DNA of 38,069 nucleotides from the NCBI GenBank assembly GCA_002104945.1, contig MCFH01000119.1:1-38069 (forward strand). The letters run 5' to 3'. Both the position numbers and the translations under genes were made by a program. This document shows positions 356 through 30,507 of the stretch, piece by piece (positions within the stretch are counted from its first letter, which is position 1; every line of letters starts with the position of its first letter). This DNA is from Piromyces finnis finn (lineage: Eukaryota; Fungi; Neocallimastigomycota). Under the pieces are notes generated by a model. The model ran no database searches. It worked only from the letters and a program-made list of their open reading frames with translations, and was not told the origin of the DNA.

Positions 356-471
356 CTATTCTATTAAGTATATTTATATTCGAAATTATAAAGTTTAATT
401 AGTGATACATTTAATAATTGCATTAATTGCGATAATATAAATGACAAGAATTTACAAAATGGAAAATAAAT

Positions 472-1335
472 AAAAATATAGCGAAAATGGACTTAGTGGT
501 TTAATCCCAAAAGAGATTACGGAACTAATAAATAATATAATAATAAATAATATAATAATAATAATAATAATAATAATAGTAATAGTATAATGAATAAAAT
601 TAATATAATAATAATAATAATAATAATAATAGTATAGTAATAATTAGAATATAATATATAATAATAATAATAAAAAATTATATAATAGTAATAATTAGAA
701 TAATAATAATAAATATATAATAATAATAATTAATAATAGAGTAATAATAATAACTAATAATAATAATAATATTAATTTAAATTATATATATAATTTGTTT
801 TTTTTCTCTACCTATAATAGAATAATGATTTTTATTTTAAATTTTTTTTTAATATTATTTTTATACAATATAACTGGTATGATAATTATAATACCAAACC
901 AATTTTAATCAAGGATATAAATCTAAAAAAGGATGATTCCACATATCAGAATAAGGACTATTCTGAAAACCAGAATGATGAGATTCAGATAATAAACCAT
1001 TATTAACTACAGTAATTATACCATGAATAAGTATTATTGCTGTATTTGTATATTCCTAGTTTCTAAAATAAATAAAAAAAATGGTTTAAAGAACAACAAT
1101 GATTCTGTCACTGTAAATATAGAGAATTAAATTTCTACACGTGATTCTTCAAGTAATACAAAAAACATCATCTAATATAATAATTATACTGCACTTCTTG
1201 CTTCAGTTAATAATGCAATAGAGAATAATTGTATTCATTCAAAATTTGTTACTTCAATTAATAATAGAAATATTAGTTCTCAAAATAATGAATCAGTAAA
1301 TAATAATAACAATGGTAAGAGATTATCAAATTATT
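472..1335 (+). pseudogene. LRR receptor-like pseudogene: last-LRR (cap) exon plus terminal exon
   Basis: 480-525 reads SENGLSGLIPKEITEL, compared with SENGFSGSIPDEIFEL at 5581. About 870-1335 reads YDNYNTKPILIKD and is clearly similar at DNA level to 5757-6264. It contains stops (e.g. TGA in the TM region) and frameshifts. Confidence 0.75.
527..775. repeat. Imperfect (AAT)n microsatellite
   Basis: Long run of TAA/AAT units with interruptions, inside the intron of the pseudogene. Confidence 0.9.
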
Positions 1336-1534
1336 AAATATATTTCTAAAAATTAATAATAATAATATTTATTTGAATATTATTGTTTTGTACATTGCAT
1401 TTCTTTGTTCATACTAGACATTTTATATTTATTTAAAAATGAATTAAATCTTTTCTTCTTTTTTTTGTTATATAAAAATTATATTTATAACTTGTTTCTT
1501 CATTAAGTAAATGTCCATATTTAAAATCATTCAT

Positions 1535-1576
1535 ATAATAATAATTAATAAAGTAATAATAATTAATAATAATAAT

Positions 1577-1647
<71 letters not shown>

Positions 1648-1656
1648 TAATAATAA
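1535..1656. repeat. Imperfect (AAT)n microsatellite
   Basis: Long TAA/AAT run ending at the acceptor of the LRR exon at 1659. Confidence 0.9.
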
Positions 1657-1658
1657 AG

Positions 1659-2587
1659 AAATCTAGGTAATAATATTTTAAATGGATATTCCATCAGAAT
1701 TTGGAAAACTATCAAACTTACAAACATTGTAAATTGTTTTATATAATTTATTTAAAAAATTCATATTTTTATATATAATTAATTAATAAAAAACATATCT
1801 TTTTTAAAATAATGCATAACCTCTTTCTTCATTAATATAATATATAAAAGAAAACTCAAAACAATACTTTAATGGTCTAATTCCATCTGATCTTGGAAAA
1901 TTACCAAACTTAAAAGAATTGTAATCTTTTTATATTTATCATAAAGATAGTAAAATGTAATACTTAATAATGTTTGATTTTTATTTAATAATTTAAACTA
2001 AAGAGATATAAGTAAAATGGGTTAGTTGTCTATCCAGAGAAATTAAGATGAAATGAATTATGATTTGTAATATCTTAAACTTTTTTTTTTTTATATGATT
2101 TTATAGTTTTACAATTATCATTGAATAAAGAAGTTTTATATTAAAAAAGTTTTATATATTTAATAAATTATTTTATTGTAGATACAAAAAATTATAATGA
2201 TATTAATAAAGTTAAACCAGTAGTGAATGATACAAATTAAACGAGCTAATTTAAATTATAAACCATCATCATTTAATAAATAATAGTAATTGAAATGATA
2301 ATGATAATTACTATTATAATAGCCATATTTTAGTCTTAACTTTACAAAAAAGAAAAGAATAATGATAAAAATTTAACAAATTCTATTATTCACGAATTTC
2401 AATGATTCATCAGAGAACATAATAGTTAATACAAATGATAATAATGACAATGACTCAATTATTATTATCATCGCGAAATAATTTTAATAGTTTATTGAAT
2501 GATTCCGATAGTAATCCTAATATTCACTTGTTGCAACGGACCAACCTCCCAAAATATGAAGATATAATAGAAGAAAATATGAAATAA
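1659..2587 (+). pseudogene. LRR receptor-like pseudogene: 2 LRR exons, cap exon and terminal exon
   Basis: AG/GT-bounded exons at 1659-1728 (NLGNNILNGY-PSEFGKLSNLQTL, 70 nt), 1851-1920 (GLIPSDLGKLPNLKEL, 70 nt) and 2004-2066 (degenerate cap). The terminal exon from 2182 ends in LPKYEDIIEENMK*. Several indels and stops; no first exon found. Confidence 0.75.
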
Positions 2588-3269
2588 ATCAAAGTAGTAT
2601 AAATGCAAATAATGAATTTTCGAAATTTAAAGGTGGAAATGGATGATGTAGGAAGAAGTTGGGTTATATCAATTCCATATAAAAAAAAACCTCTTTTAGA
2701 ATTATTTTAACTATCCATTATTGAATAAAGTAAAAATATATTAAATAAAGTTTATTTAAAAATAAATAAATGAAGCAATTAAAATTTAAATTTTAATAAA
2801 TTAATAATTAAGTAAATTCGTGTAACAAGAGTTCCATTTTAGTGTAAATCCTTAAATTAAAATCCAATAAAATTTCATATAAAAATCACAAATGAAAGTT
2901 ACACAATATTCTAATATTATATATATTAATAAATTAATAAAGTTTATAATTTTATATTAATTATTCTTTTTTTTTTTTTTAAACAAAAAATGTAAAAAAA
3001 AATGAATTATTCTCAAATTGTATAATGACTTTAATAATAATGATAGTAAATAAGTTAATAAACTATACCTCTCTAACTAGTTTACATTGGCAATTTAATG
3101 AATGAAAATGATATTTCTTAGGTATATTCTCAGCATTCAATATTAATTTACATTACATTACATTTAAGCGAAATTATAGGAAAAATTCATCTATAGTTCA
3201 TCTATTAATAGTATTGTTTATGTTTTATATTGTCATGGCATGGATCATTGAGGTAGTTAGGAGTATCTT

Positions 3270-3737: not shown

Positions 3738-6264
3738 ATGGTTAAATACGCTTTATTATTGTTAAGTTTAACCTCTACAATAAAAGTAATCTATTCAGCA
3801 TTTATTGAAGATTGCATTCCAATAAATAAATATTAGGAGAACCTTCTGATATATGATTTGTTCCCATAAAGGAATTAATTGTATCAATAGTTTTATAACA
3901 GAATGTAATAAAAAGTTTTTTTTTTCAATCAGTGAAAAAAGAAAAAAAATATTAACATATTAACATAGATTAAAACAAACTTATTTAACAATTTTTATTA
4001 TAAATAGAAAATTAGAAAATGAATATTTAAAATGTCCTATTCCTTCAGAAAATTGGTAGTTTAAAAAACTTGGAAAAACTGTAATTTTTATTTCAATCTT
4101 CTTAATAAAGAACCTAAAATATATTATATTTTTAATTGATATTTACTTATTATTATTATTATTTATAAATAGAGTTTTATCTCATAACTATTTATATGAT
4201 AATATTCCTTCAGAACTTGGGAATTTATCAAATTTAAAAATATTGTAATTGGTTATTTTTATTTTATTATTATTATTTTTAAGTATAATAATTAAAAATA
4301 TATAAATTAATTTTTTTAATTGATAATTTTTATATTATAAAATAGAAATTTAAACTGTAATGATTTAATAGGTACTATCCTTCTGAACTTGGAAATTTAA
4401 AAAAATTTGGAAGAAATGTAATTATTATTTTTTTTCTTTATCTATATAAATAGTAGTAATATTGAATAATATAACATAAATATTAATATATAGTCATTAT
4501 AAATAGCGATTTATCGATTAATCAATTAAGAAGTTCAATTCCTCGTGAAATTGGAAATTTACCAAACTTGAAAAAATTGTAAATATTTTTTTTCTTTTAT
4601 AATAAGTAAAAAAAAAAAAAATAGATTTATAGAATTATTATTTTTTTAATATTAATATATTTATATTTTACATAGGATATTATATTCAAATGATATAATA
4701 AATATGATTCCTTCAGAACTTGGTAAATTAGAAAAATTGAATATGCTGTAACTATTTTTCTTTTCTTTTCTTTATAATAAATAGTAAATTTTCATATATA
4801 ATAATTTATAATTTTTATTTCATATTATTATGTATTATAAATAGAGTAATCATAATAATGCATTAAGTGGTTCTATTCCTCCAGAACTTGGCAATTTAAA
4901 AAACTTATATTATTGTAAATAATATTTTTCAATATTATAAATTTAATATTCTATTTATTATTACAATTTTATTTATTTTTTTTTTTTTTATTATTTTCTA
5001 ATATAAATAGAAGTCTTAATAATAATATGTTATATGATGCTATTCCTCCTGAGCTTAGTAATTTGGAAAACCTGGAATATATGTAATTGCTGGTTTTTTT
5101 CTTATATGCATTAAAAGAAATTTATTAATTTTTATTTCAACCTCATATTTTTTAAAATTTTATTTATTCATGATTAATATAATAAAATTCATTTAAAAAA
5201 TAAAAGGTATTTCGGAAATAATACTTTAAATGGTTCTATTCCCCCTTCTTTTGGAAATTTATCAAAATTAAAAATTCTGTAATATAATTTATTTAATAAT
5301 TATTATAAAAATAAAAAGTTATTATATTTATAAATAGGAATTAAAAGTTAACAATTACCCATTTTCTTATATAAATGTTATTTTTAATAATCCTTATTAA
5401 AAAAAAAATAATAAAGAAATCTCCAAAATAATACTTTAAGTGGTCCTATTCCACCAGAACTTGGAAGATTATCAAACTTGAAGGAATTGTAAATTTATAT
5501 TTTATAAAAATTATTAATTAAATAACAATAATAAAATCTCATATAATTTTTTTTTTTTTATAAATTTATAAAAAAAATAGAGATATTAGCGAAAATGGAT
5601 TTAGTGGTTCTATTCCAGATGAAATATTTGAATTACAAACGTGTAAAATGTAAATACTATTTCTTTTAATTGTATTGTATTATAAATAATTCATAAATAT
5701 ATATTATTTTAATTAATTACATTTTTGTATAATAAAAAATAAAAAATATAATATAGATATAGAAAAAATTTTAATACCAAACCAATTTCAATCAAGGATA
5801 TTCCTCAAAATAAGGATGTTTCAGATAATAAAAATAAAAATAATAAATCAATAATAACTACGGTAACCATGTCAGGAATGAGTATTGTTGCTTTATCAGC
5901 TTTATTTCTGGTTATAAAGAAAAATAAAAAAAATAATATAAAAAAAAAGAATAATTCTACAAACAATGTGAATAATATATATAATATAAATGATTGTTTT
6001 CCTTCCTCTACTGATTCTTCAAACGATATCAAAAGAATATCTAATCATTCTAATACTGTTTATAATGCTCATCTTGCACCAGTTGATGATACAATTAATA
6101 ATAATAGAAATCATTCAAAATCTGTTAATTCAATTAATAATAGAAACAATAATTCACAAAATAATGAAACAAGAAATAACAATATTTTCAATTATAACAT
6201 TTCTATCAATGAAGAAGACTTACTTCCAAGTTATAAAGAAGTAGTAAATGAAAAAAATACATAA
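3738..6264 (+). pseudogene. LRR receptor-like gene A (12 exons, 9 LRR exons plus cap); frameshifted as assembled
   Basis: Exon 1 at 3738-3904 (signal peptide MVKYALLLLSLTSTIKVIYSA plus Cys cap). LRR exons: 4008-4080, 4173-4244, 4346-4417, 4507-4578, 4676-4747, 4845-4914, 5011-5082, 5207-5278, 5417-5488 (e.g. NLQNNTLSGPIPPELGRLSNLKEL). Cap exon 5581-5649. Terminal exon 5757-6264 with TM and EDLLPSYKEVVNE. All splice sites are AG/GT. About 8 single-nt indels lie in exons 1, 2, 4 and 7. Confidence 0.85.
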
Positions 6265-7087
6265 TAACACAATTACAATGTATAAATATTAATTATAATA
6301 ATATAAATGAAAAAGACAACCAAGTTATTAATATTAATGTATAATAACATTGTAATATATATTTAAAAGAATTATAATTCTCTTTTATATATTTATTTTA
6401 AATACCCAAACCTAATAATATTATGAGTTTTTTAAATCTATTTAAAACTTTAAAAAAAAAAAAAAAAGTATTAATTTTTGATTATTTTTTATTTTATTAA
6501 AGAATAAATAATAATACTTTTTAAATTTAACTATCAATTAGAATAAAACTACAAAAAAATAGAAATAAAGTAATTAAATAATATAAATAACAAATGTTAT
6601 TAGATATTTTATATTTAAATATAGTTATCTAATATTTATTTAAATATTAGTTTTTTTTCTTTCAAATTTAAATAAATTTAATATTATATTATCACTTTAA
6701 TTTTTCAGTTAAAATGTTTTCAATATTCGTATCGAGTAATAATTAATTTTTGATTTTTATTAACAAAATAAAAAAAAAAGAAATAAGAATAATAATAATA
6801 TTAAATACATAAATATTATAAATATATAATATTTAGTATGTATAGGTATAATGAATATTTTGTAATCTCAAATCCAGATTTTAATCGAGTATTAAAATAT
6901 AATTGACTTAATATTTTTATTATATAATTTTATTTTTTTTTTTTAATTTTTTTATCCTTTATTCCTCAAGATATAGATAATATATTAAACATGATAAAAT
7001 TATAATTATTTGTTTTTACTTTATTTAAAAGAATAATATTATTAAAATGTATATATTGATTTATAATTTATCGCTTTCTATTATAAA

Positions 7088-7150
7088 CTGAATGTTATGA
7101 ATAATTTAAATAGAATTATCCCTTAAGAGCTTGGAAATTTAAAAAAAATA
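7088..7150 (+). pseudogene. Orphan decayed LRR exon
   Basis: Reads NNLNRIIP*ELGNLKK, matching the family consensus NxLxGxIPxELGNL with an in-frame TAA. Confidence 0.55.
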
Positions 7151-9034
7151 ATTATATAAATCCACAAATAACAATTTTATTATAAATACGTTACATTACA
7201 CGATGTTAAGAAAAATCATCTTATTAAATAATATTAATAATAATTAGTTTAGCTTTAGTAAAGGGGACTTTTCAAATTGAAAGAGTGAAGCGTATAAAAA
7301 TAAAAAAAAAATTTTAAATTGAAAGTTTAATTTTTTTTTTGTATTTTTTATTAAATTTTATTTTCAGTTGTGTAACATAAAAATTAACTAATGTATACAT
7401 TGATGTATTACATTAAAATAAGATAAAATAGCGCTTTCTTTTTTTTTTTTACATTTTATATATAAATATTCATATTTTTTATTGTTAATATTAGTACATA
7501 GATCTATAAGATCATATATAATTACTTTTTAATAGATTTAAGAGTCGAGTCATATTGACTCTTCATTGAATTTCATTAATTCTTGGTTAATTTTCTTTTG
7601 GTACTAGTAGTGATTTGTCCTTTTCTGTTTAATACATCGTCATAACTTTAAAGTATGAAATTTTCACTAACAACTAAATTGTTGTTATGTACATTATCTA
7701 ATTATTTAGTACTATAACATGTCACTTTACTCTTTATTATAATTAATTATATCTATATAATTATAAAAATCTGCATTATTTCTCTTTTTTATATTATAAT
7801 TTATAATTTCATATTTTAATTTCATTAAATATAAATAATTACCAAAATAATAATTTATTTAAATATTCTATTCAATTTCTTTAACTTTAAAATAAATTAG
7901 AAATTATTATATAAATAAGTATAAAATGGATTAATTAAACTAGAATAAATTATTAACATTATTATTTATGTTTTCTCACATTTCTTTTCCCATTTCTTTT
8001 TTCCCATATTTTTTTTTTAGAAATAATGATAATTTAAACTTTTTTTTATTGAAATTAACCTTTTTTTTTTTTTTACCCAAAAAAATCCTTTAAATAAAAA
8101 TTGATTTTTTTTGTTTGTTTGTTTTGTTTCTCATAAAACTTACTATAAATAATTAATTTTATTGGTTATTAATCATCTAAAATTTAAAATGAATTTATTC
8201 ATAAACTTTTTAATCTTTTTATACTATTATTTACATTATTTTGTAAATAATAGTAAAAAGAGTTGTATAATAATTGGAATAATTTAATTATTATCTCAAT
8301 TTTTAAGGCATTTAATACATTTTATTTATAGGATTATTGAATTTTATAATAATTCATTATAAAAACTTAAATATACTTTATTAAAGAATTTTATTTTTTT
8401 TTTTATTTATTTTATTAATGATTTAACTTTTTGTAAGTAGAAAAAATATATATTATTATATTATTATTATATTATTACAAATAATAAATAATTATAACTA
8501 AAAATTAATTGAAATTTAAAAATAAAATAGATCAAAGGAATTTATTGAAATAAAAATTATAAAGTTAGATCTATACTTTTATTATTATTTAAAAATGAAT
8601 AAAACAGTAATCTAGTTCATTTACATGAATTACTTTATTTTATATCAATATTTAGAAATAATGAAATGAATAATTAAAATATATATATATATTTAAATAA
8701 AAAAAATTTATAATAATTATAACTTATAATTGTACTTCTTAATATGTATTTTTGATAATAATTATATAAAAAAAATTACAAAATTAACATTTATAAGGTT
8801 TACTTTTTGATTTAAATCTCCAATATTAAAATTCGTTTTTAATTCATTTAAAATTAAACTTTAATAAAATAAAAATTTGATCTATTTTTATTTGTAATAT
8901 GAAAATCCTTTTTTTCCTTTTCAATATAAATAGGTTGAAAATGTATTAAAAAAAAAAAAAAACTATTATTTATTATACCTTTAAAAAATATTATTTATTT
9001 TAAATATTAATTTAGAATTTTACTTTAATTAAAA

Positions 9035-12000
9035 ATGAAATTTCAACAAATCGGTGTTGTTCTTACTTTTCTTTCATTAAATCTTAATGGTGCTTTATCT
9101 TTACCTGCTAATAAAATAGGAAGTAGAATTGATGAACTTGATCCACAAAAAATTGATGATATTTTTGGTATTAATGTAAATTTACGTAGACCAAATATAA
9201 CTGCTATTCTTTCAAAAATTTCAGATAAAATACAAGAAGGAAAGGATAAAATTAAGAAATATAAAAAGGATGAAGTAAAATCTAATATTAATAAATTATT
9301 TTTCAATAAATACTTTAGTAATAGAGTATGAATTGATACCTAACAATTCATATTATTTTTTTTTTATAAATTTTAGGTATGTATGACAGACGAATGTGTA
9401 GAATCTTCAAAAAAAATATTAAGTAGTATGGATACTACAGTTGATCCATGTGATGATTTCTATCAATATGCTTGTGGTGGTTGGATGGTATTTATTTATT
9501 TTTATTTGTATATGAAATAAATAAAATATAGAAAAAAAATATTTATTAATACTTTGTTTTTTTATTTTAATAAATAAAATAAAAAAATAGGAACAAAATG
9601 AAATTCCATCAAACTCTGTTAGTATAAGTACTTCCATTAAAGGAAATGCAAGAAACATGGTAAATAATAATAATAATAATATGTTTTAAAAATTATAAAA
9701 AAGTAATAATTATTAATAATAATATATAATAAAAAATATTTATTTCTTTTCAATAAATATAGGAAATTATTAAGAATATTCTTGAACGTGACTACAAGGT
9801 TAATGAAAATTTAAGTCCAGAAGAACAAGAATTAGATAAAAATTTATTTAATAAATTAAAAACAATTTTCAATACTTGTATGGATGTTGATAAGATTAAT
9901 GCCAAAGGAAAACAACCATTAATTGATTTATACGATAAATTAAAAATCTACGAAAATAGAGAAAATTACAAGGATGTTAATAAATTCACTGAACAACTTG
10001 TTACTCTTAATAAGTATGGTATTTTCCCATTCTTTAAAATTGGTGGTCATACAGATTATGAAAAGGCAAATCATTACCTCATTGCTTTTCTTCAAAATGG
10101 TTTAACTTTAAGTAAAGACTATTACTCTTATGACGTTGTTTTGGTCGAATTAAGAAAATACATTAAAAATATATTAACTTTAATCTTTGATAGTACTGAA
10201 AGAGATATTGATGCTATGGCAGATTCTATTTTAGAATTTGAAAAAAAGGTTGCCAATGCTTATGTTCCAAGGTAAAAAAAAATTAGATAATTCATTTTAA
10301 TCTATTTGTTAAATTAATGTTAAATTTTTTTTTTTTTTTTTTATTTTTATTCAATTTTTTAAAAAAATATTATGATATTGTGATGTATTATGATAAATAG
10401 TGTAAAATTACAAAATCCACAATTTTATTATAATAAGCGCACTATTAAAGAATTATCTGAAAGATATCCAAAAATCAATTGGAGTTTATTCTTTAAGCAA
10501 AGACTTGCTAACCATAATATTGATTTTGAATTTGATGATGAAACCATCTTTATTGATATGACACCAGATTATTTAACAACTTTAAATGAAATTCTTGAAG
10601 AATCTGATGTTGATAGTATTGCTTACTATTTAGAATGGTATATTTTAAAAGCATAATAGAAATTGATAAAATTAATAATATACTAATAATTTTTTATTAT
10701 ATCCATTATTATATAATATCTAACATATATCTAAATAAATAATAATTAATAAAATTAGGAGAGTTATTGACAGATTCTATGAATACTTATCTAGTGATCT
10801 TCAAGGTCCAGTTAAAGAATTTAGCGATTTCTTATATGGTAAGTATTATAAAATATCAAATTAAATTTAATATAGAATTATTATTTTAATTACAATGTAT
10901 TTATTAAACATTATTTAATTACAATTTTTATTAATATTTTTATATAATAATTCTTTTTTACCTTTTTAATAAAAAAAAGGTGGAAGTGTTGAAACTCCAT
11001 TATATGATAAATGTTCTTCAATGGTTGATGATATGATGGAAATGGCTGTTGGTAAATACTTTGTTGAAGAAGCCTTCGATTCTAATACTAAACCAGCTGT
11101 TAAAGAAGTATTCAAAAATATCAAGCAATCCATGATTGAAAGAATTCCACAAATGGAATGGCTTGATAAGGAAACTAGTGATTATGCTATTGAAAAGGTT
11201 AAAATGATTAAAGAAAATATTGCTTATCCAGATTATCTTATGGATCTTGAAAAGATGACTAAAAAGTATGAATATTTAGAACTTAATCCAGATGATTACC
11301 TTGGTAATGTTATCAGTTATCTTAACATGTACTACAGAAATGATTTAAATCGTATTGTTGAACCAACTTCAGACTGGCGTTACTCTCCACAAGTAAATAT
11401 TTTCATAATAAATAAAATATATATTATATTTATGTTATATCATTTTTATAATTACATAATATAATAATTTCTATAAATTATACTTTTTTAATTTTTTTTA
11501 TATAAATTAGACCTTTAATGGTTTCTACTATCCACCAGATAATTCTATCAATATTCTTGCTGGTATTTTACAATCTCCATTCTATGATTCTCATGAACCA
11601 GATTACATTAACTATGGTGGTCTTGGTATGCTTGTTGGTCATGAATTAACACATGCTTTTGATGGTACTGGTAGACAATTTGATAAGAATGGAAGTATGA
11701 CTAATTGGGTTAGTATTATATAACAATTACAATGTATTATATAATATTTATATATATTGTTGATATATTTAAAAAATATTAATTTCGTAAAATTTTTATT
11801 TTTAAAATAATATAATATAGTGGACTTCATCAACAGCAGAAAACTTTAGTAATGCCTCTCAATGTTTCGTCAACCAGTAAATATTTTCAAAAATAAATAT
11901 ATATATATTTATTTATTTATTTATTATTTTAATAAAAAAACTAATTTTTTATAATAAAAAATAGATATTCAAATTATACTATTGTAGGAAGTGATGGCAA

Positions 12001-12487
12001 TAACTATAATGTTGATGGTGAAGTAAGTTATTATATATAAACATTAAAGCTATTATATTAAACTATTATTATACTATATATTATAAATATTGAAAAAAAT
12101 TTATTTTAATCATCATATATTTTATTTTTTATTATTTCATAGTTTACTCTTAATGAAAACATTTCTGATAATGGTGGTGTTGATCGTGCCTATGAAGCTT
12201 GGAAAATATCCATGAATAACGATGAAAAAGAAGCTAAAGAACGTAATAAGATACTTCCAGATTTCACTAAATATACTAGAGATCAATTATTCTTTATTTC
12301 ATTTGGTCAAATTTGGTGTTCTAAAATGAGACCAGAAGTTGCTGTTCAAAGATTATCTCAAGATAATCATGCTCCAAGTGAATGGCGTGTTAAGGGTGTC
12401 TTAAGAAATTCAAAATATTTCGCTAAAGCTTTCAATTGTCCAGTCAATTCACCAATGAATCCAGAACAAAAATGTTCAATTTGGTAA
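9035..12487 (+). CDS. Secreted M13-family (neprilysin/ECE-like) zinc metallopeptidase, 11 exons, 771 aa
   Basis: Exons: 9035-9274, 9377-9487, 9591-9659, 9763-10271, 10401-10637, 10759-10838, 10980-11392, 11511-11708, 11821-11876, 11965-12022, 12143-12487. These total 2316 nt and stay open when spliced. Motifs: signal peptide, [24 protein letters not shown] (HExxH at 11640-11654), [18 protein letters not shown] and C-terminal CSIW. Confidence 0.93.
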
Positions 12488-14099
12488 AATTAATTATTAA
12501 AAATGGAAAAGAGTTGTATTTATATATTTTCTAATAAATGTATATCTAAATATGTAAAAAATAGAATAATATAAGAGAATTATTAACTATTATATTATTT
12601 TAATAATAATAAAAATTAGAAGAAATAAATAAAATTCACATAATAAATAAAAAAATTAAATATAAGAATTTTTTTTTATATTTTTTTATAAAATTTTTTA
12701 TTTTTAAAAAGTAAAAAAGATTTTTTTCCTTTTTTTATTAAATTTTTTTAGACAATTTTTCGTTCAATTTATTGTTGTGAAACATTTTTTAGACTAGTAG
12801 TAATACACTTTTTATATTTATTTGATTTAAAATTTATAGATGATAATTAATATTAATATTATTAATAATATTAATATAATAAATAATAAATATTAAAGTG
12901 ATATAAAGAATTAGATGAATTCTGCAATTTGTACATGTGAAATTGACCTACCTAATAAATTAAATGAAATAAAAAAGAAAACTAACATCAGGTAGGATAG
13001 TGTGGTGTACACTAAATTCTCCTATGAGTTTATAATTTTAATTAAATTAGTAATAAAGTTTAAAAATATTTGATGTCATTAAAAAAAAAAAAGAGTTTAT
13101 AATAATGGTTTTATTCGAAATTAGAAATGTTCTTTTATCATATCCATTCGATGTCTTATTACACCGAATAAATAATCCTTTTATTCTATTTATATTTAAT
13201 AACATAATTTTAAAATATTCTGTATTAAAATTGATCTATATAAAAGTTTATTAGAATGCTTTTATATTTATTATTAAAATAAAGCAAAGGATTTTTAAAG
13301 TGTATATTGAAAATATTTTTATTTTTTATAACTATTTTTAAATATTTAGAAAAATAAAATATGTATTTTATTCATATTTTTGTTATTGTAGTAAAAAATA
13401 TGAAAATTATATACTTTAAAGCCATTTCTTTTTTTTTTTTTACTATTATCTCTAACCTTTTTATTATTAAATACATTTTTTTATTTGATGTATCTCCAAT
13501 ACTTTATCATATTTACTTAAAAATAAAAAAAAGACACCAAATAAAATATTTTTTGGAGAAAATAAAGAACAATCTTTTTAAATGGGAACAAAACTTTTAA
13601 CAACCAAAATATCCATGTTTTATTAATATAATAAATTCTTTATATTATAACAAAATACTGTTAAAATATGTAAAATATATAAAATATGAAGGTATAAAAT
13701 GTATTAAAATATTTTGTAGTAAGTTAAAGATGCAACCATCCACAATGTAAACAAGTAAACAAGTAAATAAAAATATTTTAATTTTAGGAAAATTTCATTT
13801 CTACAAAAATGTATGAATAAAAATGTACAATTATAATTAATAATGTACATTCTCATAATTTCAATAAAAATTGTTTTGTTGAGAAGTTGAGAAAAAAGAA
13901 TAAAATTTATTAAACTTTATATTTTTACATCAAAATATATATATATAATAATGATAAGAACCATACAAAATGTTTTTTAACTATTTTGTGTCATAATCTA
14001 GTTTTGCAAAACACACTTTAAAAATATAAATTAATAAAAATAATCTTTAAATCATAGAAATAGAACTTGAAAACTATTTTTAGAAATAATAAAAAAAAA

Positions 14100-16227
14100 A
14101 ATTCATATATTATTATTGTTGGTTTATTCATATTTTCGTTTGGTAATATTATTAAATCTGCATATCATTTACCTGAATCAACTTCTGTTAAAGTTGTACA
14201 TGAATAATAAATCAATGTATCAAAATATATATTTTGAACAATAAGTTTAAATATTGCTTCTTTATAATAATTTATATTTGAAGTTTTATTATGAAAATAT
14301 TCAATTATAATAGCTACTTCACGTTATTCTTTTCCATTCCATGTATCATTTAATTGTTTTTTAGATAATTCTACTTTTTCAAATAATTTTTTCCATTTAT
14401 TATTTTCTGTGGATACCTTAAATGATGTATGTACTTCTTCATTAGGAATAAATAATTCCCAATTAATTTATCAGATTTATTATCATAATCTTTTTTATAT
14501 TCATAGGCTAAATATCCAAGATGAACAAGCTTTACTAAAACATCGTATTTATTATTATATTCTCCGCAATTTCTATTGAAATTAACAATATCCATGTCTA
14601 ATTTTATTCTATTCTTTTTATCACTCATTAAATATACAATATCTTTTTTTAGTCCATCAAAATCCATATCGATATATTTATAAAGGTTATCATACGATTC
14701 AGTTAAATGCCAATAGTTTCTAATACTATTGAATTCAAATGCTTTTATAATTGACAATGATGTATATATTTCATATGTTTTCCAATAATTCCTATTTTCA
14801 TTTTTACTTCCATCTGTTAATCTGTAACCATTATATATTTCTTTAATATTATAATAAAAAATATTTACATATTCATCATCGAAATTTTTCTTTTTTTTAA
14901 ATTTTTTGCATAATTCTTTCACTTCTTCAACTGTAAAGCCAACATATTTTGACATCCATCCACCTTCTACCATAGAAAAGTGATCAAAAATCCCTGTGAT
15001 CTCAGAATTTAATCCATAACTCTTAAGAGGCAAAATTCCTGTCATATAAGTTAAATGTATGCTTTCTTCTCCTTTAATTAATGAAGTTAAAAATTTCAAG
15101 TACTCTATTGAATTTTTATTATTATCTCGAAATACTATATCCCATTCATCAATGACGAGAATATTATGTCTACTCGTCTTTTCTAGTATTTCGTTCAATA
15201 TTTCATTAATGCTGTTTTTATTATCACATTCAAAATCTGCTATAGAATTTTTTACTTCTTTTATAATAGATGTTTTAATATTTTCTTTTCCTTCTTTTAT
15301 ACTTGTTTGATAAAGATAATTAAACATATTTAATTTTATTACATTAAATTTTCCTAAATATTTATCTCAATTTTCTGATTTTGAAATTTTTTTATCCATA
15401 AAACTAGTTATTTTCGATTCTTTATAACTATAATAAGCTGAAAGCATATCTACTATTTTGGTTTTCCCAAATCTTCTAGGTCTTGAAATACAAATATTTT
15501 GTTTCTCTGAATTTATTATTTTATTTAGTTCAAGAATTAATTCTGTTTTATCAACATAAAATTCTCTTTGTGAAAATTTTTTAAAATCATTTTCACCAGG
15601 ATTAAATATATTGTTTGTTTCCTCTTTCATATAATTCCACCAGTCAGCTTTAGAAATCAATTTAAATAATCGATGTATTTCTTTATTTGGAATGGATATT
15701 TCATTATTATATTTATCATAATTTAAATACCCTAAATGGACAAGTTTCATTAGATTGTTTTTTCTTTTTGAAAATGAATAAATATCATTTTGATACAATA
15801 ATGAATCTACTTTTATTTTTTTATCCCTTTCTGATTCTATTAATAAAGTAATAACATCTTTTAGATTATCATAATTCTTTTGAATAAATTTAGCAAGTAA
15901 ATCATAATAATTATCATCCATTTGATACCTCTTAACAATATTATTTTTTAAGGATTCTAAAATTAAATATGGAGAATATATTTTATATATTTCATTTGAA
16001 AAACTATCTATTAATTGATAACTGCCATAAGAGTCTTTTAAATTCTCATACTTTATTCTATTTCTACCTCTATCTTTGTCATTTTCATACTTTGTTTCGT
16101 TTTTATGTATTAATGCTTTATTATTTATTATTTCATCTTCAGAGGTTTTTTGTGTGATTATTTACAAGTATATAATTCCTTTAAATATTGAAAAAGATTC
16201 ATGATTAATTAATATTTTTATTTTCAT
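14100..16227 (-). pseudogene. Intronless bacterial-type AAA-ATPase-like / PD-(D/E)XK nuclease-domain pseudogene
   Basis: Motifs NPG..F....YVDKT, ISRPRRFGKT (Walker A, about 15460-15483), LVIDEWD, MTGILP, VGFTVEEV and LVHLGYL. The shifted 3' frame reads IPNEEV...EVDSGK*YADLIILP...PTIIIYE. ORFs 15367-15921 and 14371-15327 are in one frame split by a TGA; there is a frameshift near 14460 and further stops. Confidence 0.85.
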
Positions 16228-17233
16228 AGCTTTTTTCTTTTATTTTGAAAAAAGCTATAAATAAATTGAATGATATCCATTGTATCATATTATTAATAAT
16301 ATATCTTAATAATTAAAATAAAATATTTAATATAAAAATTGATACTTTATCATTATGGTATAATTCATAATACTATGTATAATATTATAGAGAGTATAAA
16401 TTATAAATTGATGTTATAGAAATAGAAATATTACTATTATTATATTATAATAAAAAAATCTTTTAAAAGGTAATATAATGTTAGTTTTATATATAATATA
16501 TATGTATTACAATAAAGGTTTTAAAATAGTTATTGCCATTTTAAAAAATTATATAATTATATAATCCATTAAATGAATAAATATTACTATATTAATGAAA
16601 ATTAAGTTATTTATTTTGATTTTCTTTGAAATTAATAATATTTATATATATTTATGTCTTTTATAACACCATTTTCACAAGGATCCTCTCCTCGTATACC
16701 ACAATATACCTATGTCTATGAATATCCAAATTATAGAAAAATATTTATAAATTGTATCCTTATGCGTTACTGATATATCATCATTATAAATACAATGATT
16801 ATCAATACATTTATTAAATAAACAATCAGAAACATTATATTTTAAAGAAATGTTAAAAAACTAGTATCACTATTAAGACAATAAACCATCACTTTATTTT
16901 TTTTGCTTTATCATTCTATATACAATACTCTACAATATTATATTTTAAATTGTAGTTTTAGGCTTTCATTCGGAAATTCAATAAAATTACCATAGTTATC
17001 ACTATTTTGTAAAGTGATACAATTTCTATTTCTACAATAACTTTTTTCATATTTTGCTCTTACCTGAATTTTCATATTTACATAATAATTTATCAGATAT
17101 TAAATATTAATAATTATGTATATCAAAGGAATATAAATATCTGTATAATTAAATCTATCGTTATCCTTATAATATTTTGTTTTTTTAAAAGGTAAAAAAA
17201 ACGTTCAAAATGATCATATTTGAAACAAAAAAG

Positions 17234-17243
17234 ATTTTATTGG
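17234..17243 (-). promoter_or_regulatory. Extended CCAAT box (ATTTTATTGG) upstream of gene B
   Basis: About 30 nt before the ATG at 17275, within a TGAAACAAAAAA-ATTTTATTGGTTAAA block shared with gene C. Confidence 0.45.
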
Positions 17244-17274
17244 TTAAATAATAAAATTAAAAAAAAAAAAAAAA

Positions 17275-17869
17275 ATGAAAACGCTTTTTTTGTTATTGCT
17301 AATCAATTTAACTTTTACAGCAAAGTTTATTTATTCTTAATTTGTAGAAGATTGTCGTATTGTAAATAAATTATTGGGAGAATTTGAGGAAAATGATTGT
17401 TGTTCTTCCCCTGGAATTACTTGTGATAAAGGTTTCGTAGTGGCAATGTAATAATAAAGAGAAAGGCTACTTTTTTTTTTTTTTTTCATTTTATTTCTAT
17501 TCAATAACCTAGATATTCAATATTAATAATAATTAACAATTAATTAACAATAGAGAATTAAGAAATGTTAACGTCATATTGCCTGGTGGTTCAATTCCAC
17601 CTGAAATTGGAAATTTATCAAACTTGATAAAATTGTAATTATCCATTTTATAAAGGAAAATTTAAAAATTCTTTATTTATATACATCAATTTATATTTAT
17701 TTTTTTTTTCAATGTTTTACAAAATAATAAATAGAGATCTTTTCAATAAAGGTTTTTCTGGTTCCATTCCTCCAGAGCTCGGAAATTTATCCAATTTGAA
17801 AGTTTTGTAAAGATTGTTTATATTATTATATAATTTATAAAACCTATAATTTCTTATTTTTAAAATTAC

Positions 17870-17901
<32 letters not shown>

Positions 17902-19748
17902 GAATTCTCCAAAAAAATGCTTTAACTGGTCCCATTCCACCTGAACTTGGAAATTTAACAAAATTGACTTGGTTGTAAATATTTTTTAATAATATTTATT
18001 TAAATCTCTCTATAAATTTTTATTCCTCCAATGAATCATAAAATAATTACATTATTTTCTTTTTTTTTTTTTTTATTTTTCATTTCTAAAAATACATTAT
18101 TAATTAAAAAATAGAAATTTAGTGGATAATAAATTAAGTGGTTCTATTCCACCTGAACTTGGAAATTTAACAGAATTGGATTCACCGTAATGAATTTATA
18201 TATACTATCTGTTTAATCTATTTATTTATTTTTAAATTCTTAATTTATTAAAATAAAAAAAATATAAAATAATGTTATTTATTCTAATTAGAAATATAAA
18301 ACTCTTTCATTAATTAAAAAAAAAAAAAAATAGACGATTAAGTGATAATTATTTAAGTGGTTCCCTTCCACCTGAACTTGGAAAGTTATCAAGCTTGAGA
18401 ACTTTGTAAATGATTTTTATAATATTATTTGTTTATCTATTCATTATATTAATTCTTATTTTAAATGAAACAAAAAAAAAAAAAAATTATATTATTTACA
18501 TTATTTTTTATTCTTTTTTAAAATTATTATAAATATGTTATTAATAGATGGATAGAAAATAATAACTTTAGTGGTTCCATTCCACCTGAGCTTGGAAATT
18601 TATTAAAATTGAGATGGATGTAATTAATAATATTTGTTTATATATAATCATTGCTTCTTTATTAATAATTAATTAATTATTTATTTATAAAATAAAAATA
18701 ATTCATGACCACTTAAAAACAACAACAACAACAACAACAACAACTAAAATTGAATAATATCTAATAAATCATGTATGATATTCAGAAATATTAGTAATAA
18801 CGGATTTAGTAGTACTATGCCACAAGAAATATTAAATCGTCCATATGATGAATTGTAAGTAATTTCTTTTTTTTTTATATAAATAGATGTACTTTTTATA
18901 TCGTTGCTCAATATGATTATATTGAAAATAGTTTATAGTTTTAAATTATGTTGATTATCATTTTAATGATTATATATAAAATGAATACAAAAAGTTTTTT
19001 ATTTTAAAATAAATATTAATATTAATTATTTGTACTGTCTATATATAGTAAATTTTATAATTATGATGATAGTACCAAACAAGTTCCCGAAAAAGAAGAA
19101 TCAGATAAATTAATTATTGATAATGATTTAAATAAGGATACTTTAAATAAGGATACTAAATCCGATAAGGGTGGTAGTAATACATTATTAGCAATAGTTA
19201 TTGTGTTTGGAATAATTGGTATTGTTTCAAGCATTTTATTATTCCTCGTTATAAAAAAAAATAAAAAGTTAAAAGATAATGATAAAAATAATGTAAGAAA
19301 TAGTTCTTTATCGACTGTAAATAATGTTCACATTAATCCATCTATAATTTCAGGAAATGATGAAAATACAACACTTGATATTGTTTCTACCCCAGTTCTT
19401 TCTTTTAATAATAATTATAACAGTACTATTACGGAAATAAATACTAATAATGCTATTACTACTATTCATGATGATGATGATGATGATGATTCAATAGTAA
19501 TTAATTCTACTATTACTACAAATAACAGATATAGTGTTCCTTTAAATTCTACGAATAATATAAACCATGTAATGACAATGAATAGCATTGGAGAAAAGGG
19601 TTTACTTCCAAGTTATGAAGATGTTTTAAATGAAGATGGAAAGCATAACACGGAAAAATATCCACTGTCTGACGATAAATCCAAAATTCAAACTATAAAA
19701 AATGAAAAAAATAAGGAACCACTTCATTCATCAAAAAAGAAATATTAA
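17275..19748 (+). pseudogene. LRR receptor-like gene B (9 exons, 6 LRR exons plus cap); single premature stop
   Basis: Exons: 17275-17447, 17554-17634 (81 nt), 17735-17806, 17903-17974, 18115-18186, 18334-18405, 18548-18619 (72 nt each), 18786-18854 (69 nt), 19049-19748. The spliced length of 1383 nt is in frame; the only lesion is TAA at 17338-17340 (codon 22). TM LLAIVIVFGIIGIVSSILLFLVI; tail GLLPSYEDVLNE. Confidence 0.88.
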
Positions 19749-20058
19749 AAATAATTTTTAAAAATAAAAAAAATGAAAAAGTATACTTTGAAAGTATATT
19801 AAAAATAATAAAAAATTTCATAGTAAAAAAATGAAAAAAAAAAAAAAATAAAAAAATAAAAAATATTTAAATATAGTTTTAAATAAAAAAAAATAAAAAA
19901 TAGAAATTTATTTAATTTGAATTTTTTTTTTTTTTTTTTTAATTTTATTAAAATAAAAAGGCGGATTTTTTTTTTTTTTACATTTTTTTTTAAAAATAAA
20001 AAAAGTCCAAAAATCGTCCGCTTTTTTTAAAAAAGTTTGAAAATTTGAAACAAAAAAA

Positions 20059-20068
20059 ATTTTATTGG
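20059..20068 (-). promoter_or_regulatory. Extended CCAAT box (ATTTTATTGG) upstream of gene C
   Basis: About 85 nt before the ATG at 20152, in the same block as upstream of gene B. Confidence 0.45.
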
Positions 20069-20151
20069 TTAAAAAAAAAGAATTTAATTAATAAAAAATA
20101 TATAAATTTGAAAAAGTAAAAAAGTTAAAAAAAAAAATAAAAATTTGAAAA

Positions 20152-21884
20152 ATGAAAAAGTTGGTTTTGTTATTGCTGTTCAATTTAACTTTTACAATAA
20201 ACGGTGTCTTTTCAGTATTTGTAAATGATTGTAGTGCAGTAAATAAATTGTTAGGAGAATCTGATAATTATGATTGTTGCACTCATAATGGAATTACATG
20301 TGAAAACGGATTCGTAGCAGTAATGTAATGATAAAAACAAAAAGTTCACTTTTTTTTTTTTTTATTTCTACTTAATAGTATAAATAAATGAATATTTATT
20401 TTTAATAATTAATTAAACAATAGAAATTTAAGTAATGGTTTGTATGGTGGTTCAATTCCTCCTGAACTTGGAAATTTGACACGTTTAGTTTATCTGTAAT
20501 TATTCTTTTTCATTTATATAGGAAGGAAGAATTAAAAGTTATTTATATATTTATATATACACTAATCTATATATTTTATTATAATGTTTTACGATATGAT
20601 AAATAGAGATCTTAGTGATCAAGGTTATCATGGTTCCCTTCCTTCAGAGCTCGGGAATTTATCAAATTTGCAATATATGTGAAGATTGTTTATATGTTAT
20701 TTGCATAATATAAATGATAATATAAATTTTATTCTAATTTTTTTTTTTTTTTTTTTTAAAAAATTATTAAAAATATTCATTATCATTATTATATAAAATA
20801 ATAATAAAAAAAAAGATATCTTAGTAATAATGCTTTTACTGGTTCAATACCATCTGAATTTGGAAATTTATTAAAATTGGAAATTTTGTACCTATTTATT
20901 GATATAATTTAATATTATAAAAAAATAAAAATAAAAATTATTAAACTTTCCTTTAAAAATATACAATTATTTTATTAACTAAATAAATAGATCATTAAGA
21001 GATAATCTTTTAAGTGGCTTTATCCCTCCTGAACTTGGAAGGTTAAACTTAGAATATTTGTAAAGTATCTTTTACTATTTGAATATATAAATAAATATAA
21101 TTTTTTATAATTTTTTTTTTGTATTTATAATATTTATATAATTATATTTTTAAACAATTCATGATCAACTAAAACAAACAACAACTAAAACTTGATAATA
21201 TTTAACTTTTTATTATATTCAGAGATATTAGGAATAACGGATTTAGTGGTTCTATACCTCAAGAAATATTAAATAATAATATTTCTAAATTGTATTTAAT
21301 TTACTTTTTTTTTTATTTTATTTATTATATAATAGTTTATATATATTATAATTATATTAGTTGTATTAAAACATTTTTATTCAAATATTCATCATTTAAT
21401 ATAATATAGTTTTCATGATAATTATAATGATAAAAATAAACAAGTTGTAGAAAAAGAAGAAAAGAATGATTTAAATAAAGATGCTAAATCCGATAATGGT
21501 ACAAATCCATTTTTAATAATAGCCATTGTATTTGGAATAATTAGTATTATTTTGACCATCCTGATATTCCTTGTTTTAAGGAAAAATAGAGATTTAAAAA
21601 AGAAAAATAATGAAAGAAATAGCTTTTCTACTTTAAATAAGGTTCACATTAACTCAACTTCAATTTCTGGAAATGGAGAAAGTTCAACTAATCTTCCAGA
21701 TATTCCTTTAAATTCTGTAAATGAGTCAAACTATATAAAATCATTAAATCATACAAATAATAATAATACTATCATTGGAGGAGAAGAAGATTTACTTCCA
21801 AGTTATGAAGATATATTAAATGAAAATGGTGAACATAACACTGGTAATATGCATGACTCAACCTCTAACTTCATTAAAGAATAA
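20152..21884 (+). CDS. LRR receptor-like protein C (7 exons, 4 LRR exons plus cap), intact, 333 aa, type I single-pass membrane protein without kinase
   Basis: Exons: 20152-20324, 20424-20495, 20607-20678, 20816-20887, 20991-21059, 21223-21291, 21410-21884, totalling 1002 nt and open. Signal peptide MKKLVLLLLFNLTFTINGVFS; cap DCCTHNGITCENG; LRRs such as YLSNNAFTGSIPSEFGNLLKLEIL; TM; tail EDLLPSYEDILNE. Confidence 0.92.
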
Positions 21885-29700: not shown

Positions 29701-30507
29701 CTCCAAATTGATCTATTAATTTTGTATAAGGAATCAAAATAATACATAAAAAATAACATTTGTACAAATGAATTTATTTTATCAATTTGAACACAAACAT
29801 AACCAACATTGATTGTAATACATAGCAAAATTACAGTTAATAATATAATACCAGCTGTTGCAAATACGCCTATCAATATTTTTAGGATTCCAATAATTAT
29901 ATTATATCTATGCAATCGTACATCTGGACCACGAGGACCATTTATCACATCATCAAAAATACTGGGTATAAATAAATTTTGAATATCCTCTTTGATAAAT
30001 TGATCTCTTGAATTATATTTACTATTAAATTTTATTGAATCGGATTCACTATCTTCTGAATTATTTTTTACGAAAATGTCTATTTTATCACCATCAAAAT
30101 TATTATTATTATTTATATTATCAAATGTATCATTGGTATTCAAAGCATGGCTTCCTTTTTCAATTTTAATATTATCATTAGATAAAGTTTCATTATTAAA
30201 CTTTAAATTTTTTTGTCATTTGTAATATCATTTTCGTTTATAGTTTCTTTATCTTTCTTCATTTCCCTCTCTTCAAGTATAAAGTTACTCTTATTTCCAA
30301 AGTTTATATTCTTTTTATAAATCATATCTTCATTTCTATTATGTTCATTCCTATTATCTTTACTCCATTTATATATTTTGCGTCTTCTTTTATATATGAA
30401 GTATCAATTTCATTCTCATTCTCTAGTGTATTTATTTTCATAATCCTATCGTCCTTGTACTCTTTTTCAGTATTATTATGGCACTTGTTGTTGCTATTCA
30501 TATTCAT
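26792..30507 (-). CDS. Intronless multi-pass membrane protein with C-terminal class-3/Atg15-like lipase domain (about 1240 aa if three homopolymer frameshifts are corrected)
   Basis: ORF pieces 30322-30507, an unlisted piece of about 30360-30210, 27411-30143 and 26792-27469 join through 1-nt shifts in A-runs (about 30359, 30208-30214, 27430-27439). About 10 hydrophobic segments precede VVAIRGT, TGHSLGG (27158-27172), ITFSSPG, FDP and TCH. Confidence 0.8.

What the first reader, a model, noticed from the sequence alone, without database searches (positions are those of the whole stretch)
4008..21291. One LRR per symmetric phase-2 micro-exon: frame-preserving modular cassette
Seen: the LRR exons in genes A, B and C are AG/GT-bounded. 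They are 72 nt (variants 69 and 81; 70 and 73 where indels occur). Introns fall after base 2 of the codon for the last L of LxxL, so each splits the LxxL|xLxxN beta-strand. Each array ends in a conserved 69-nt cap exon (xIxxNGFSxxxPxEI). Established: ERECTA- and SERK-type plant genes also delimit LRRs with introns. Inference: any exon can be skipped, duplicated or swapped in frame, and each new junction creates a new solvent-exposed strand. This allows combinatorial diversity by splicing or recombination. Exposed positions vary widely (e.g. DLFNK, ILQKN, NLVDN, RLSDN, WIENN) while GSIPPELGNL is nearly fixed.
Basis: partly seen in the sequence, partly recalled or inferred. Interest (0 to 1): 0.75.

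Follow-up and report, generated by a model that had tools for sequence, protein, structure and literature searches.

The report
Gut-fungus LRR genes, one repeat per exon
Three neighbouring genes of the anaerobic gut fungus Piromyces finnis encode membrane-anchored, plant-style leucine-rich-repeat proteins with one repeat per 72-base exon; the layout is real, but the evidence shows ordinary growth by copying exon-plus-intron blocks, not exon mixing.

Summary
In genes A (3738-6264), B (17275-19748) and C (20152-21884), all 25 introns are GT..AG and phase 2. LRR exons are 72 nt (one of 81, one of 69), and each array ends in a 69-nt cap exon. The junction codon is the last L of LxxL and lies inside the beta-strand.

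Three corrections:
- The window is an unpolished duplicate of another contig (C197). The 70- and 73-nt exons and gene A's stops are single-base assembly indels; A is intact in C197.
- Gene B carries a TAA at codon 22 in both copies.
- The public models of B and C are truncated.

In-frame modularity and duplication of exon+intron cassettes are shown: B and C are collinear, introns included, and differ by two cassettes. Exon swapping between loci is not seen: resolved exon-tree nodes are collinear, and no exon-sized match of 95% or more exists elsewhere in the genome. Splicing diversity could not be tested.

Exposed positions change much faster than the scaffold, but not significantly above neutrality.

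The same 72-bp phase-2 architecture and the same hypothesis are published for brown-alga ROCO genes. This scan had already reached the same verdict on several other loci of this genome.

The parts
3738..6264 (+). Gene A: signal peptide and Cys N-cap exon, nine LRR exons, cap exon, last exon (linker, TM, tail). Broken in this window copy by assembly indels; intact in C197:121737-124288.
   Evidence: Window exons: 3738-3904, 4008-4080, 4173-4244, 4346-4417, 4507-4578, 4676-4747, 4845-4914, 5011-5082, 5207-5278, 5417-5488, 5581-5649, 5757-6264.
4008..5488 (+). Gene A LRR array: nine one-repeat exons, all 72 nt in C197, separated by phase-2 introns of 89-138 nt.
   Evidence: Internal period-2 duplication A2/A4/A6: 79% and 74% identity, tree node 92/79.
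5581..5649 (+). Gene A 69-nt cap exon (partial terminal repeat, NGFSGSIPDEI).
5757..6264 (+). Gene A last exon: linker, hydrophobic TM stretch, basic stop-transfer, N/S-rich tail with LLPSY.
17275..19748 (+). Gene B: 9 exons (173/81/72x5/69/700), 460 codons, open except for one TAA.
   Evidence: 100% identical in C197. Public model BCR36DRAFT_464208 covers only the cap and last exon.
17338..17340 (+). In-frame TAA at codon 22 of gene B, just after the signal peptide. Present in both assembly copies, so B is probably a young pseudogene.
17554..18619 (+). Gene B LRR array: six exons (17554-17634, 17735-17806, 17903-17974, 18115-18186, 18334-18405, 18548-18619). The two cassettes absent from C lie within 17903-18619. 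The exon 5/6 junction codon reads CCA (Pro), not Leu.
   Evidence: Self-alignment 17921-18263 against 18352-18702 is 71% over 365 nt.
18786..18854 (+). Gene B 69-nt cap exon.
19049..19748 (+). Gene B last exon: linker, TM, tail with LLPSYEDV.
20152..21884 (+). Gene C: intact 333-codon gene of 7 exons (173/72/72/72/69/69/475).
   Evidence: Public model BCR36DRAFT_374611 (253 aa) starts inside intron 2 and uses a donor 18 nt upstream in exon 5.
20424..21059 (+). Gene C LRR array: four exons (20424-20495, 20607-20678, 20816-20887, 20991-21059). The last is 69 nt and one codon short.
21223..21291 (+). Gene C 69-nt cap exon.
21410..21884 (+). Gene C last exon: linker, TM (model helix 129-171 of P0002), tail with LLPSYEDI.
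470..2590 (+). Two further partial family members upstream: a cap plus tail remnant at about 470-1320, and two LRR exons plus cap plus tail at about 1665-2590. No first exon was found for either.
   Evidence: In C197 the exons at 119573-119995 are open.
7100..7140 (+). Decayed half of an LRR exon (IP*ELGNLKK), orphaned about 850 nt downstream of gene A.
   Evidence: Not recovered as an open exon in C197.

Best explanation
The window holds a tandem cluster of genes for type-I membrane LRR receptor-like proteins of the anaerobic gut fungus Piromyces finnis.

Each protein has a signal peptide, a small Cys-containing N-cap, 4-9 plant-type 24-residue LRRs, a partial capping repeat, an acidic linker, one TM helix, and a short disordered N/S-rich tail with a conserved [LP]PSY motif. 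There is no kinase.

Each LRR is one 72-nt exon bounded by phase-2 introns that split the codon of the last L of LxxL. The uniform phase is best read as a by-product of how the arrays grew: repeated tandem duplication, and occasional deletion, of an exon+intron cassette by unequal recombination. Gene duplication followed, within the cluster and across the genome.

Shown:
- the exon structure;
- that the repeats are the plant LRR type;
- collinear orthology of B and C, introns included, with a two-cassette difference;
- internal cassette duplications in A and B;
- fast change at concave-face positions against a conserved scaffold.

Inferred:
- the proteins sit at the cell surface and bind ligands on the concave face;
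- the PY motif links them to ubiquitin-dependent endocytosis;
- diversity arises over evolutionary time, not by programmed splicing or somatic recombination.

In this cluster C is intact, A is intact in the better assembly copy, and B is probably a recently inactivated copy.
For: Organism and locus:
- NCBI names for P0001 and P0002 give Piromyces finnis.
- The genome is 56.46 Mb in 232 contigs.

Exon structure, phase and splice sites.

Repeat type:
- LRR_1 passes its Pfam cut-off.
- The best solved relatives are plant LRR-RK ectodomains: GSO1 at 3e-85, then FLS2 and MIK2.
- The consensus is xLxxNxLSGSIPPELGNLxxLxxL.

TM helix and disordered tail: the AlphaFold model has LRR pLDDT of 83-96 and a helix at 129-171.

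Cassette evolution:
- B exons 1-4 align to C exons 1-4 at 70% over 816 nt, introns included. B exons 7-9 align to C exons 5-7 at 65% over 878 nt.
- Intron pairs score far above shuffles: Bi1-Ci1 z 11.7, Bi2-Ci2 z 9.6, Bi5-Bi6 z 7.4, against a median z of 0.6.
- B and A align to themselves at one- and two-unit offsets.

No shuffling.

Family size: at least about 35 distinct first-exon loci, with a large cluster on C177.

Selection pattern in B-C orthologous exons: pN at exposed codons is 0.56, against 0.14 at scaffold codons (p = 1e-7). pS is equal at 0.35 and 0.34.
Against: - No transcript evidence was reachable, so constitutive splicing is assumed, not shown.
- Public gene models disagree with mine. 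They are truncated, and one uses a different donor.
- Omega at exposed codons is about 2.1, which would fit diversifying selection. With only 21 codons it is not significantly above 1 (p = 0.32). Strong AT codon bias may also distort dS.
- The 72-nt exon tree is mostly unresolved (17 of 26 inner branches open), so old shuffling events cannot be excluded.
- Signal peptide and surface location are read from the sequence, not predicted by a dedicated tool or measured.
Confidence: 0.8

Rival explanations
1. Regulated alternative splicing: cassette exons are skipped in different combinations, so that one gene yields several receptors with different concave faces. This has been proposed for brown-alga ROCO LRR exons and shown for Dscam.
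For: - All internal exons are symmetric (phase 2-2, multiples of three).
- The junction lies in the beta-strand.
- Published precedent exists with the same 72-bp phase-2 exons and multiple splice variants (PMC11378527).
- The public model of C uses another in-frame donor in exon 5.
Against: - No isoform data were available.
- The arrays are short (4-9 repeats).
- Donors and acceptors are uniformly close to the local consensus.
- The protein database held no transcript-derived full-length or variant product of C within the searched length ranges.
- The alternative donor would leave a 17-residue repeat, which looks like a prediction error.
Confidence: 0.08
2. Ongoing exon exchange between loci, by gene conversion or ectopic or somatic recombination, uses the family and its orphan exon fragments as a reservoir. 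This is the Ectocarpus 'exon shuffling' model.
For: - The family has dozens of members with the same cassette format.
- Decayed fragments and partial genes lie beside the intact ones.
- Exposed codons change fast.
Against: - B and C are collinear, introns included.
- Resolved exon-tree nodes follow position.
- The best LRR exon identity between genes is 81%.
- Outside the redundant contigs, no array match exceeds about 72% over more than 300 nt, and no exon-sized hit reaches 95%.
- All five assembled copies of gene C keep the same exon order.
Confidence: 0.05
3. The cluster is largely dead DNA or an assembly artefact: decaying copies with frameshifts and stops, so the regular structure has no present function.
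For: - The window copy of A is full of frameshifts.
- B has a TAA in both copies.
- Two partial genes and an exon scrap are present.
- The region is assembled three to five times, with an inverted duplicate.
Against: - A's defects are single-base indels that are absent from C197, where it is an open 464-codon frame across 12 exons.
- About 90% of all differences between the window and C197 are indels.
- C is intact in every copy.
- Scaffold codons are under purifying selection, with omega about 0.35 (p = 0.015).
Confidence: 0.07

Closest known systems
Brown-alga (Ectocarpus, Saccharina) LRR-ROCO genes with shuffled LRR exons (Zambounis et al. 2012, PMC3341825; Teng et al. 2024, PMC11378527)
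   Same: One LRR per 72-bp exon. All introns are phase 2. Arrays vary in length, concave-face residues vary, and the same hypothesis of combinatorial diversity was proposed.
   Different: - The algal proteins are cytoplasmic LRR-ROC-COR GTPases with a different LRR consensus. The proteins here are secreted, TM-anchored plant-type LRRs without a signalling domain.
- In the algae, exons from different loci intermix and splice variants are documented. Here the resolved exon relationships are collinear, and no variants are known.
Plant LRR receptor kinases and receptor-like proteins (ERECTA, SERK, TMM; ectodomains GSO1, FLS2, MIK2)
   Same: - The same 24-residue plant-type repeat; these are the best solved-structure matches.
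- Type-I topology with an N-terminal Cys-containing cap.
- From my own knowledge, not tested here: ERECTA and SERK genes also carry one LRR per 72-bp exon.
   Different: - No kinase domain and no Cys-rich C-terminal cap.
- Pfam LRRNT_2 is not detected in exon 1, even at E <= 1.
- The tail carries a PY motif instead.
Vertebrate glycoprotein-hormone receptor genes (LHR, FSHR, TSHR)
   Same: LRR exons of similar size with all introns in phase 2, read as growth by duplication of one prototype exon (cited in PMC11378527).
   Different: A different LRR class, fused to a 7-TM receptor. These are single genes, not a large family.
LRR receptors of early-diverging fungi (chytrid and Blastocladiomycota LRR-RLKs)
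   Same: - Fungal proteins with plant-type LRRs. Two Catenaria anguillulae proteins, each named 'non-specific serine/threonine...' by UniRef (name truncated in the output), are among the hits.
- LRR-RLK expansions are reported in chytrids (PMC13618815).
- LRR-TM proteins are nearly absent from Dikarya (PMC2939053).
   Different: The P. finnis proteins here have no kinase domain. Their tails have relatives only within P. finnis in the searched length range.

Membership tests
Plant-type (PS) leucine-rich repeat, Pfam LRR_1 (PF00560) | 24-residue unit with the pattern LxxLxLxxNxLSGxIPxxLGxLxx | tested here: met
   Of 17 standard units in A-C, P, L19 and L22 are invariant, and I, E and G occur in 15-16 of 17. 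LRR_1 scores 32.1 bits against a cut-off of 20.6. Plant LRR-RK ectodomains are the top PDB matches.
LRR receptor-like protein (type-I membrane, no kinase) | N-terminal signal peptide and a single TM helix after the LRRs | tested here: met
   A hydrophobic N-terminus lies in exon 1. The AlphaFold model has a helix at residues 129-171 over the IVFGII...FLVL stretch, followed by a basic cluster. No dedicated signal-peptide predictor was run.
LRR receptor-like protein (type-I membrane, no kinase) | Plant-like N-terminal cap (Pfam LRRNT_2) and Cys-pair C-terminal cap | tested here: not met
   Exon 1 has a C...CC...C pattern, but gives no Pfam hit at E <= 1. The cap exon has no Cys pair.
LRR receptor-like protein (type-I membrane, no kinase) | No kinase or other signalling domain in the cytoplasmic part | tested here: met
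   Pfam finds nothing above cut-off in the last exons of A, B and C. The tail is modelled as disordered.
One-LRR-per-exon, phase-2 gene architecture | Each LRR on its own exon of about 72 nt, with all flanking introns in the same phase (2) | tested here: met
   25 of 25 introns are phase 2. Exons are 72 nt, with single exons of 81 and 69 nt and 69-nt caps. Paralogue D on C170 has the same layout.
One-LRR-per-exon, phase-2 gene architecture | Intron at the same position of the repeat as in plant ERECTA and SERK genes | not testable with these tools
Exon-shuffled or splice-diversified receptor repertoire (Ectocarpus ROCO type) | Exons of different loci and positions intermix in exon phylogenies, or near-identical exons are shared between loci | tested here: not met
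   The supported nodes are positional: caps, B2-C2, B3-C3 and B6-C5, plus A2-A4-A6 within gene A. No exon-sized match of 95% or more lies outside redundant contigs.
Exon-shuffled or splice-diversified receptor repertoire (Ectocarpus ROCO type) | Several transcripts per gene with different LRR exon sets | not testable with these tools
   No transcript data. Only one public protein model exists for each of B and C, and both are truncated.
Exon-shuffled or splice-diversified receptor repertoire (Ectocarpus ROCO type) | Positive selection (omega above 1) at concave-face codons | tested here: inconclusive
   Omega is about 2.1 on 21 exposed codons of B-C orthologous exons, with p = 0.32 against neutrality. 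The scaffold value is 0.35.

The most novel reading that the evidence does not exclude
P. finnis may use its symmetric one-repeat exons for regulated exon skipping or repetition. Each of several dozen LRR genes would then yield a set of surface receptors with different composite beta-strands. That would be a fungal counterpart of the splice-diversified LRR receptors proposed for brown algae.
Probability: 0.07. Interest if true: 0.7.

Novelty: new member of a known kind. Interest (0 to 1): 0.3.

Why it matters
Dikarya fungi are reported to lack LRR-type surface receptors (PMC2939053). A family of dozens of plant-style LRR-TM proteins in an anaerobic gut fungus is therefore a candidate sensing or adhesion system for plant cell-wall, bacterial or host cues. 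It is also poorly annotated: both public models at this locus are truncated.

The exon architecture is a clean example of repeat arrays growing by cassette duplication. The architecture and the diversity hypothesis are already published for other lineages, and nothing here shows a programmed mechanism. The practical value is corrected gene models and a warning about assembly redundancy and indel errors at this locus.

Tried and rejected
- Two scans of metagenome contigs, one with the public model of C and one with a four-tail alignment, found no relatives.
I therefore could not fetch a plant ERECTA-like locus or a Catenaria locus to compare intron positions.
- Plant LRR-RLK papers gave no statement of intron phase. 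A further literature search failed on term length.
- I checked whether in-frame stops in first exons are systematic across the family. They are not: the stops sit at different places or in the intron.
- I rejected the idea that gene A is a pseudogene after comparing it with C197.
- The large all-against-all HMMER search was not used. The protein is not left open by the family scans, and no claim here rests on absence of relatives.
- Joined (spliced) translations were made only inside local scripts, to check reading frames. Searches used single exons by reference, or the public models P0001 and P0002.
Full report
**What the window is.** The window is very AT-rich (14-30% GC) and carries spliceosomal introns. 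A word search with the last exon of gene B returned two NCBI proteins of Piromyces finnis, BCR36DRAFT_464208 and BCR36DRAFT_374611, the first at 100% identity. The assembly has 56.46 Mb in 232 contigs, and the window is contig C23:1-38069.

The window is a redundant copy of C197:117875-168898, at 98.7-99.4% identity. In the first 17 kb the two copies differ at 198 gap positions but only 22 mismatches. Most of the gaps are bases missing from the window. That is the signature of unpolished long-read consensus, not of alleles. C63 holds a third copy of the B-C region. C197 also holds an inverted and a second forward copy of the stretch from the B cap exon to beyond gene C (window 18658-24668).

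**Checking the observation.** A splice-aware scan and manual models give three same-strand genes.
- Gene C (20152-21884) is an intact 333-codon gene of seven exons (173/72/72/72/69/69/475).
- Gene B (17275-19748) has nine exons (173/81/72x5/69/700). It is open for 460 codons except for one TAA at codon 22 (17338-17340), and that stop is present in both assembly copies.
- Gene A (3738-6264) has twelve exons. In the window its first exon and exons 2, 4 and 7 carry stops or frameshifts.

The C197 copy of A differs at exactly those points by single-base indels. There A reads as an open 464-codon frame with exons 170/72x9/69/508.

All 25 introns are GT..AG (GTAAT or GTAAA in 20, ATAG acceptor in 19). 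They are 89-194 nt long and about 11% GC, against about 28% GC in the LRR exons, and all are phase 2. The split codon encodes L, I or M in 21 of 22 standard units. Each array ends in a 69-nt cap exon with xIxxNGFSxxxPxEI.

**What the genes encode.** Exon 1 gives a hydrophobic leader and a C...CC...C cap. Each LRR exon gives xLxxNxLSGSIPPELGNLxxLxx. The last exon gives an acidic linker, a hydrophobic stretch followed by a basic cluster, and an N/S-rich tail with a conserved [LP]PSY motif.
- Pfam LRR_1 passes its cut-off. No kinase or other domain is found, and LRRNT_2 is not detected in exon 1.
- By sequence, the closest solved structures are plant LRR receptor-kinase ectodomains: GSO1, FLS2, MIK2, PEPR1 and ERL1/2.
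- An AlphaFold model of the public C model, built on a 35-row alignment, has pLDDT 83-96 over the repeats, a long helix at 129-171 (the TM segment) and a disordered tail.
- In that model the strands at residues 31-33 and 55-57 contain the junction residues I32 and L55. The intron does fall inside the beta-strand.

The public models are poor. B is reduced to the cap plus the last exon. C starts inside intron 2 and uses a donor 18 nt upstream in exon 5.

**Variability.** In the 24-residue register, P, L19 and L22 never vary, and I, E and G have 0.3-0.5 bit of entropy. Positions x2, x3, x5, x7, x10 and x12 have 2.7-3.2 bits. This is the standard LRR pattern of a variable concave face on a fixed scaffold.

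For the B-C orthologous exons, Nei-Gojobori counts give these values:

| Codon class | n | pN | pS | omega | p against neutrality |
|---|---|---|---|---|---|
| Exposed | 21 | 0.56 | 0.35 | about 2.1 | 0.32 |
| Scaffold | 49 | 0.14 | 0.34 | about 0.35 | 0.015 |

The contrast in pN between the two classes is strong (p = 1e-7). The excess over neutrality at exposed codons is not significant. The exposed face is therefore at least unconstrained, and diversifying selection is possible but unproven.

**How the arrays evolved.** B and C align collinearly, introns included. B exons 1-4 match C exons 1-4 at 70% over 816 nt. B exons 7-9 match C exons 5-7 at 65% over 878 nt. Two B cassettes have no partner in C.

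Orthologous introns score far above shuffled controls: Bi1-Ci1 z 11.7, Bi2-Ci2 z 9.6 and Bi7-Ci5 z 5.6. So do neighbouring B introns: Bi5-Bi6 z 7.4 and Bi4-Bi6 z 5.7. The median over all pairs is z 0.6. B aligns to itself at one- and two-unit offsets (71% over 365 nt). A does so at one to four units.

This is growth by tandem duplication of exon+intron cassettes. That mechanism also explains why every intron has the same phase.

**Testing for shuffling.**
- The highest LRR exon identity between genes is 81%, and the cap exons reach 87%.
- In an ML tree of 29 exons, the supported nodes are the caps (99/96), B3-C3, B2-C2, B6-C5 and A2-A4-A6. These pairs are collinear and none crosses. The rest of the tree is unresolved.
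- Genome-wide blastn with the three arrays finds many family loci. The first-exon search gives at least about 35 distinct loci, with a large cluster on C177.
- Outside the redundant contigs, nothing exceeds about 72% over more than 300 nt, and no exon-sized hit reaches 95%.
- All five assembled copies of C keep the same exon order.

Recent exchange of exons between loci is therefore not seen.

**What could not be tested.** Two metagenome scans were blank. The large HMMER search was not used.

**Comparison with what is known.** The same architecture (72-bp LRR exons, all phase 2) and the same idea (exon shuffling plus alternative splicing as a source of receptor diversity) are published for brown-alga ROCO genes. 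Phase-2 LRR introns are also known from gonadotropin receptor genes (PMC11378527 and PMC3341825). One LRR per exon in plant ERECTA and SERK genes is from my own knowledge and was not verified here.

LRR-TM receptors are reported as nearly absent from Dikarya, with a few in chytrids and zygomycetes (PMC2939053). LRR-RLK expansions are reported in chytrids (PMC13618815). I found no paper describing this Neocallimastigomycota family. The LRR part has close matches in bacteria, diatoms, Catenaria and plants. The tail matches only P. finnis proteins in the searched length range.

**Earlier notes of this scan.** Earlier notes on other pieces of this genome describe the same family, and follow-up agents reached the same verdict. 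I re-tested the points used here: the organism, the cassette duplication, the absence of shuffling, and the two-exon difference between B and C.

**Verdict.** This is a new fungal member of a known kind of gene architecture, and interest is modest.

Noticed in passing
window 1-38069 against G000:C197:117875-168898 and C63: The window contig is a redundant, less polished copy of part of C197: about 90% of the differences are single-base indels, mostly bases missing from the window. C63 is a third copy of the B-C region. Frameshifted 'pseudogenes' on C23 should be checked against C197 before they are believed.
   Followed up: yes
G000:C197:143396-149382 (inverted) and 149387 onward: C197 carries a forward-inverted-forward triplication of the stretch from the B cap exon to beyond gene C (window 18658-24668). 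C23 lacks it. The extra copies differ by indels only, so this is either a foldback assembly artefact or a real palindromic duplication.
   Followed up: partly
window 6223-6240, 19607-19630, 21790-21815; L004:7400-7440: The only conserved element of the cytoplasmic tails is [DE]xLLPSY[EK][ED][VI] (PPSY in the C170 paralogue). This is a PY motif of the kind bound by WW domains of Rsp5/NEDD4 ligases, and it also reads as YxxPhi. Weak Pfam echoes to NEDD4_Bsd2 and WBP-1 appear.
   Followed up: partly
window 470-2590 (+): Two more partial family members lie upstream of gene A: a cap plus tail, and two LRR exons plus cap plus tail. Long (AAT)n microsatellites sit where further exons would be expected, and no first exon was found.
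   Followed up: partly
window 9035-12487 (+): A multi-exon M13 (neprilysin-type) metallopeptidase gene with a signal peptide lies between genes A and B (Pfam Peptidase_M13_N and Peptidase_M13).
   Followed up: partly
window 14371-15921 (-): Two adjacent intron-less ORFs (184 and 318 aa) lie here. The upstream one matches Pfam AAA-ATPase_like (PF09820). They are probably one gene split by an assembly indel or a real frameshift.
   Followed up: no
window 26792-30143 (-): A 910-aa multi-TM ORF with no Pfam hit overlaps the start of a 225-aa Lipase_3 ORF. They are likely one gene, a membrane-anchored class-3 lipase, in the GC-richer part of the window.
   Followed up: no
L005 (G000:C3:56400-56900): A decayed paralogue on C3 has an intron swollen by about 300 nt of (ATT)n microsatellite. 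One LRR exon there carries a stop, and an unrelated ORF sits where its first exons should be.
   Followed up: no
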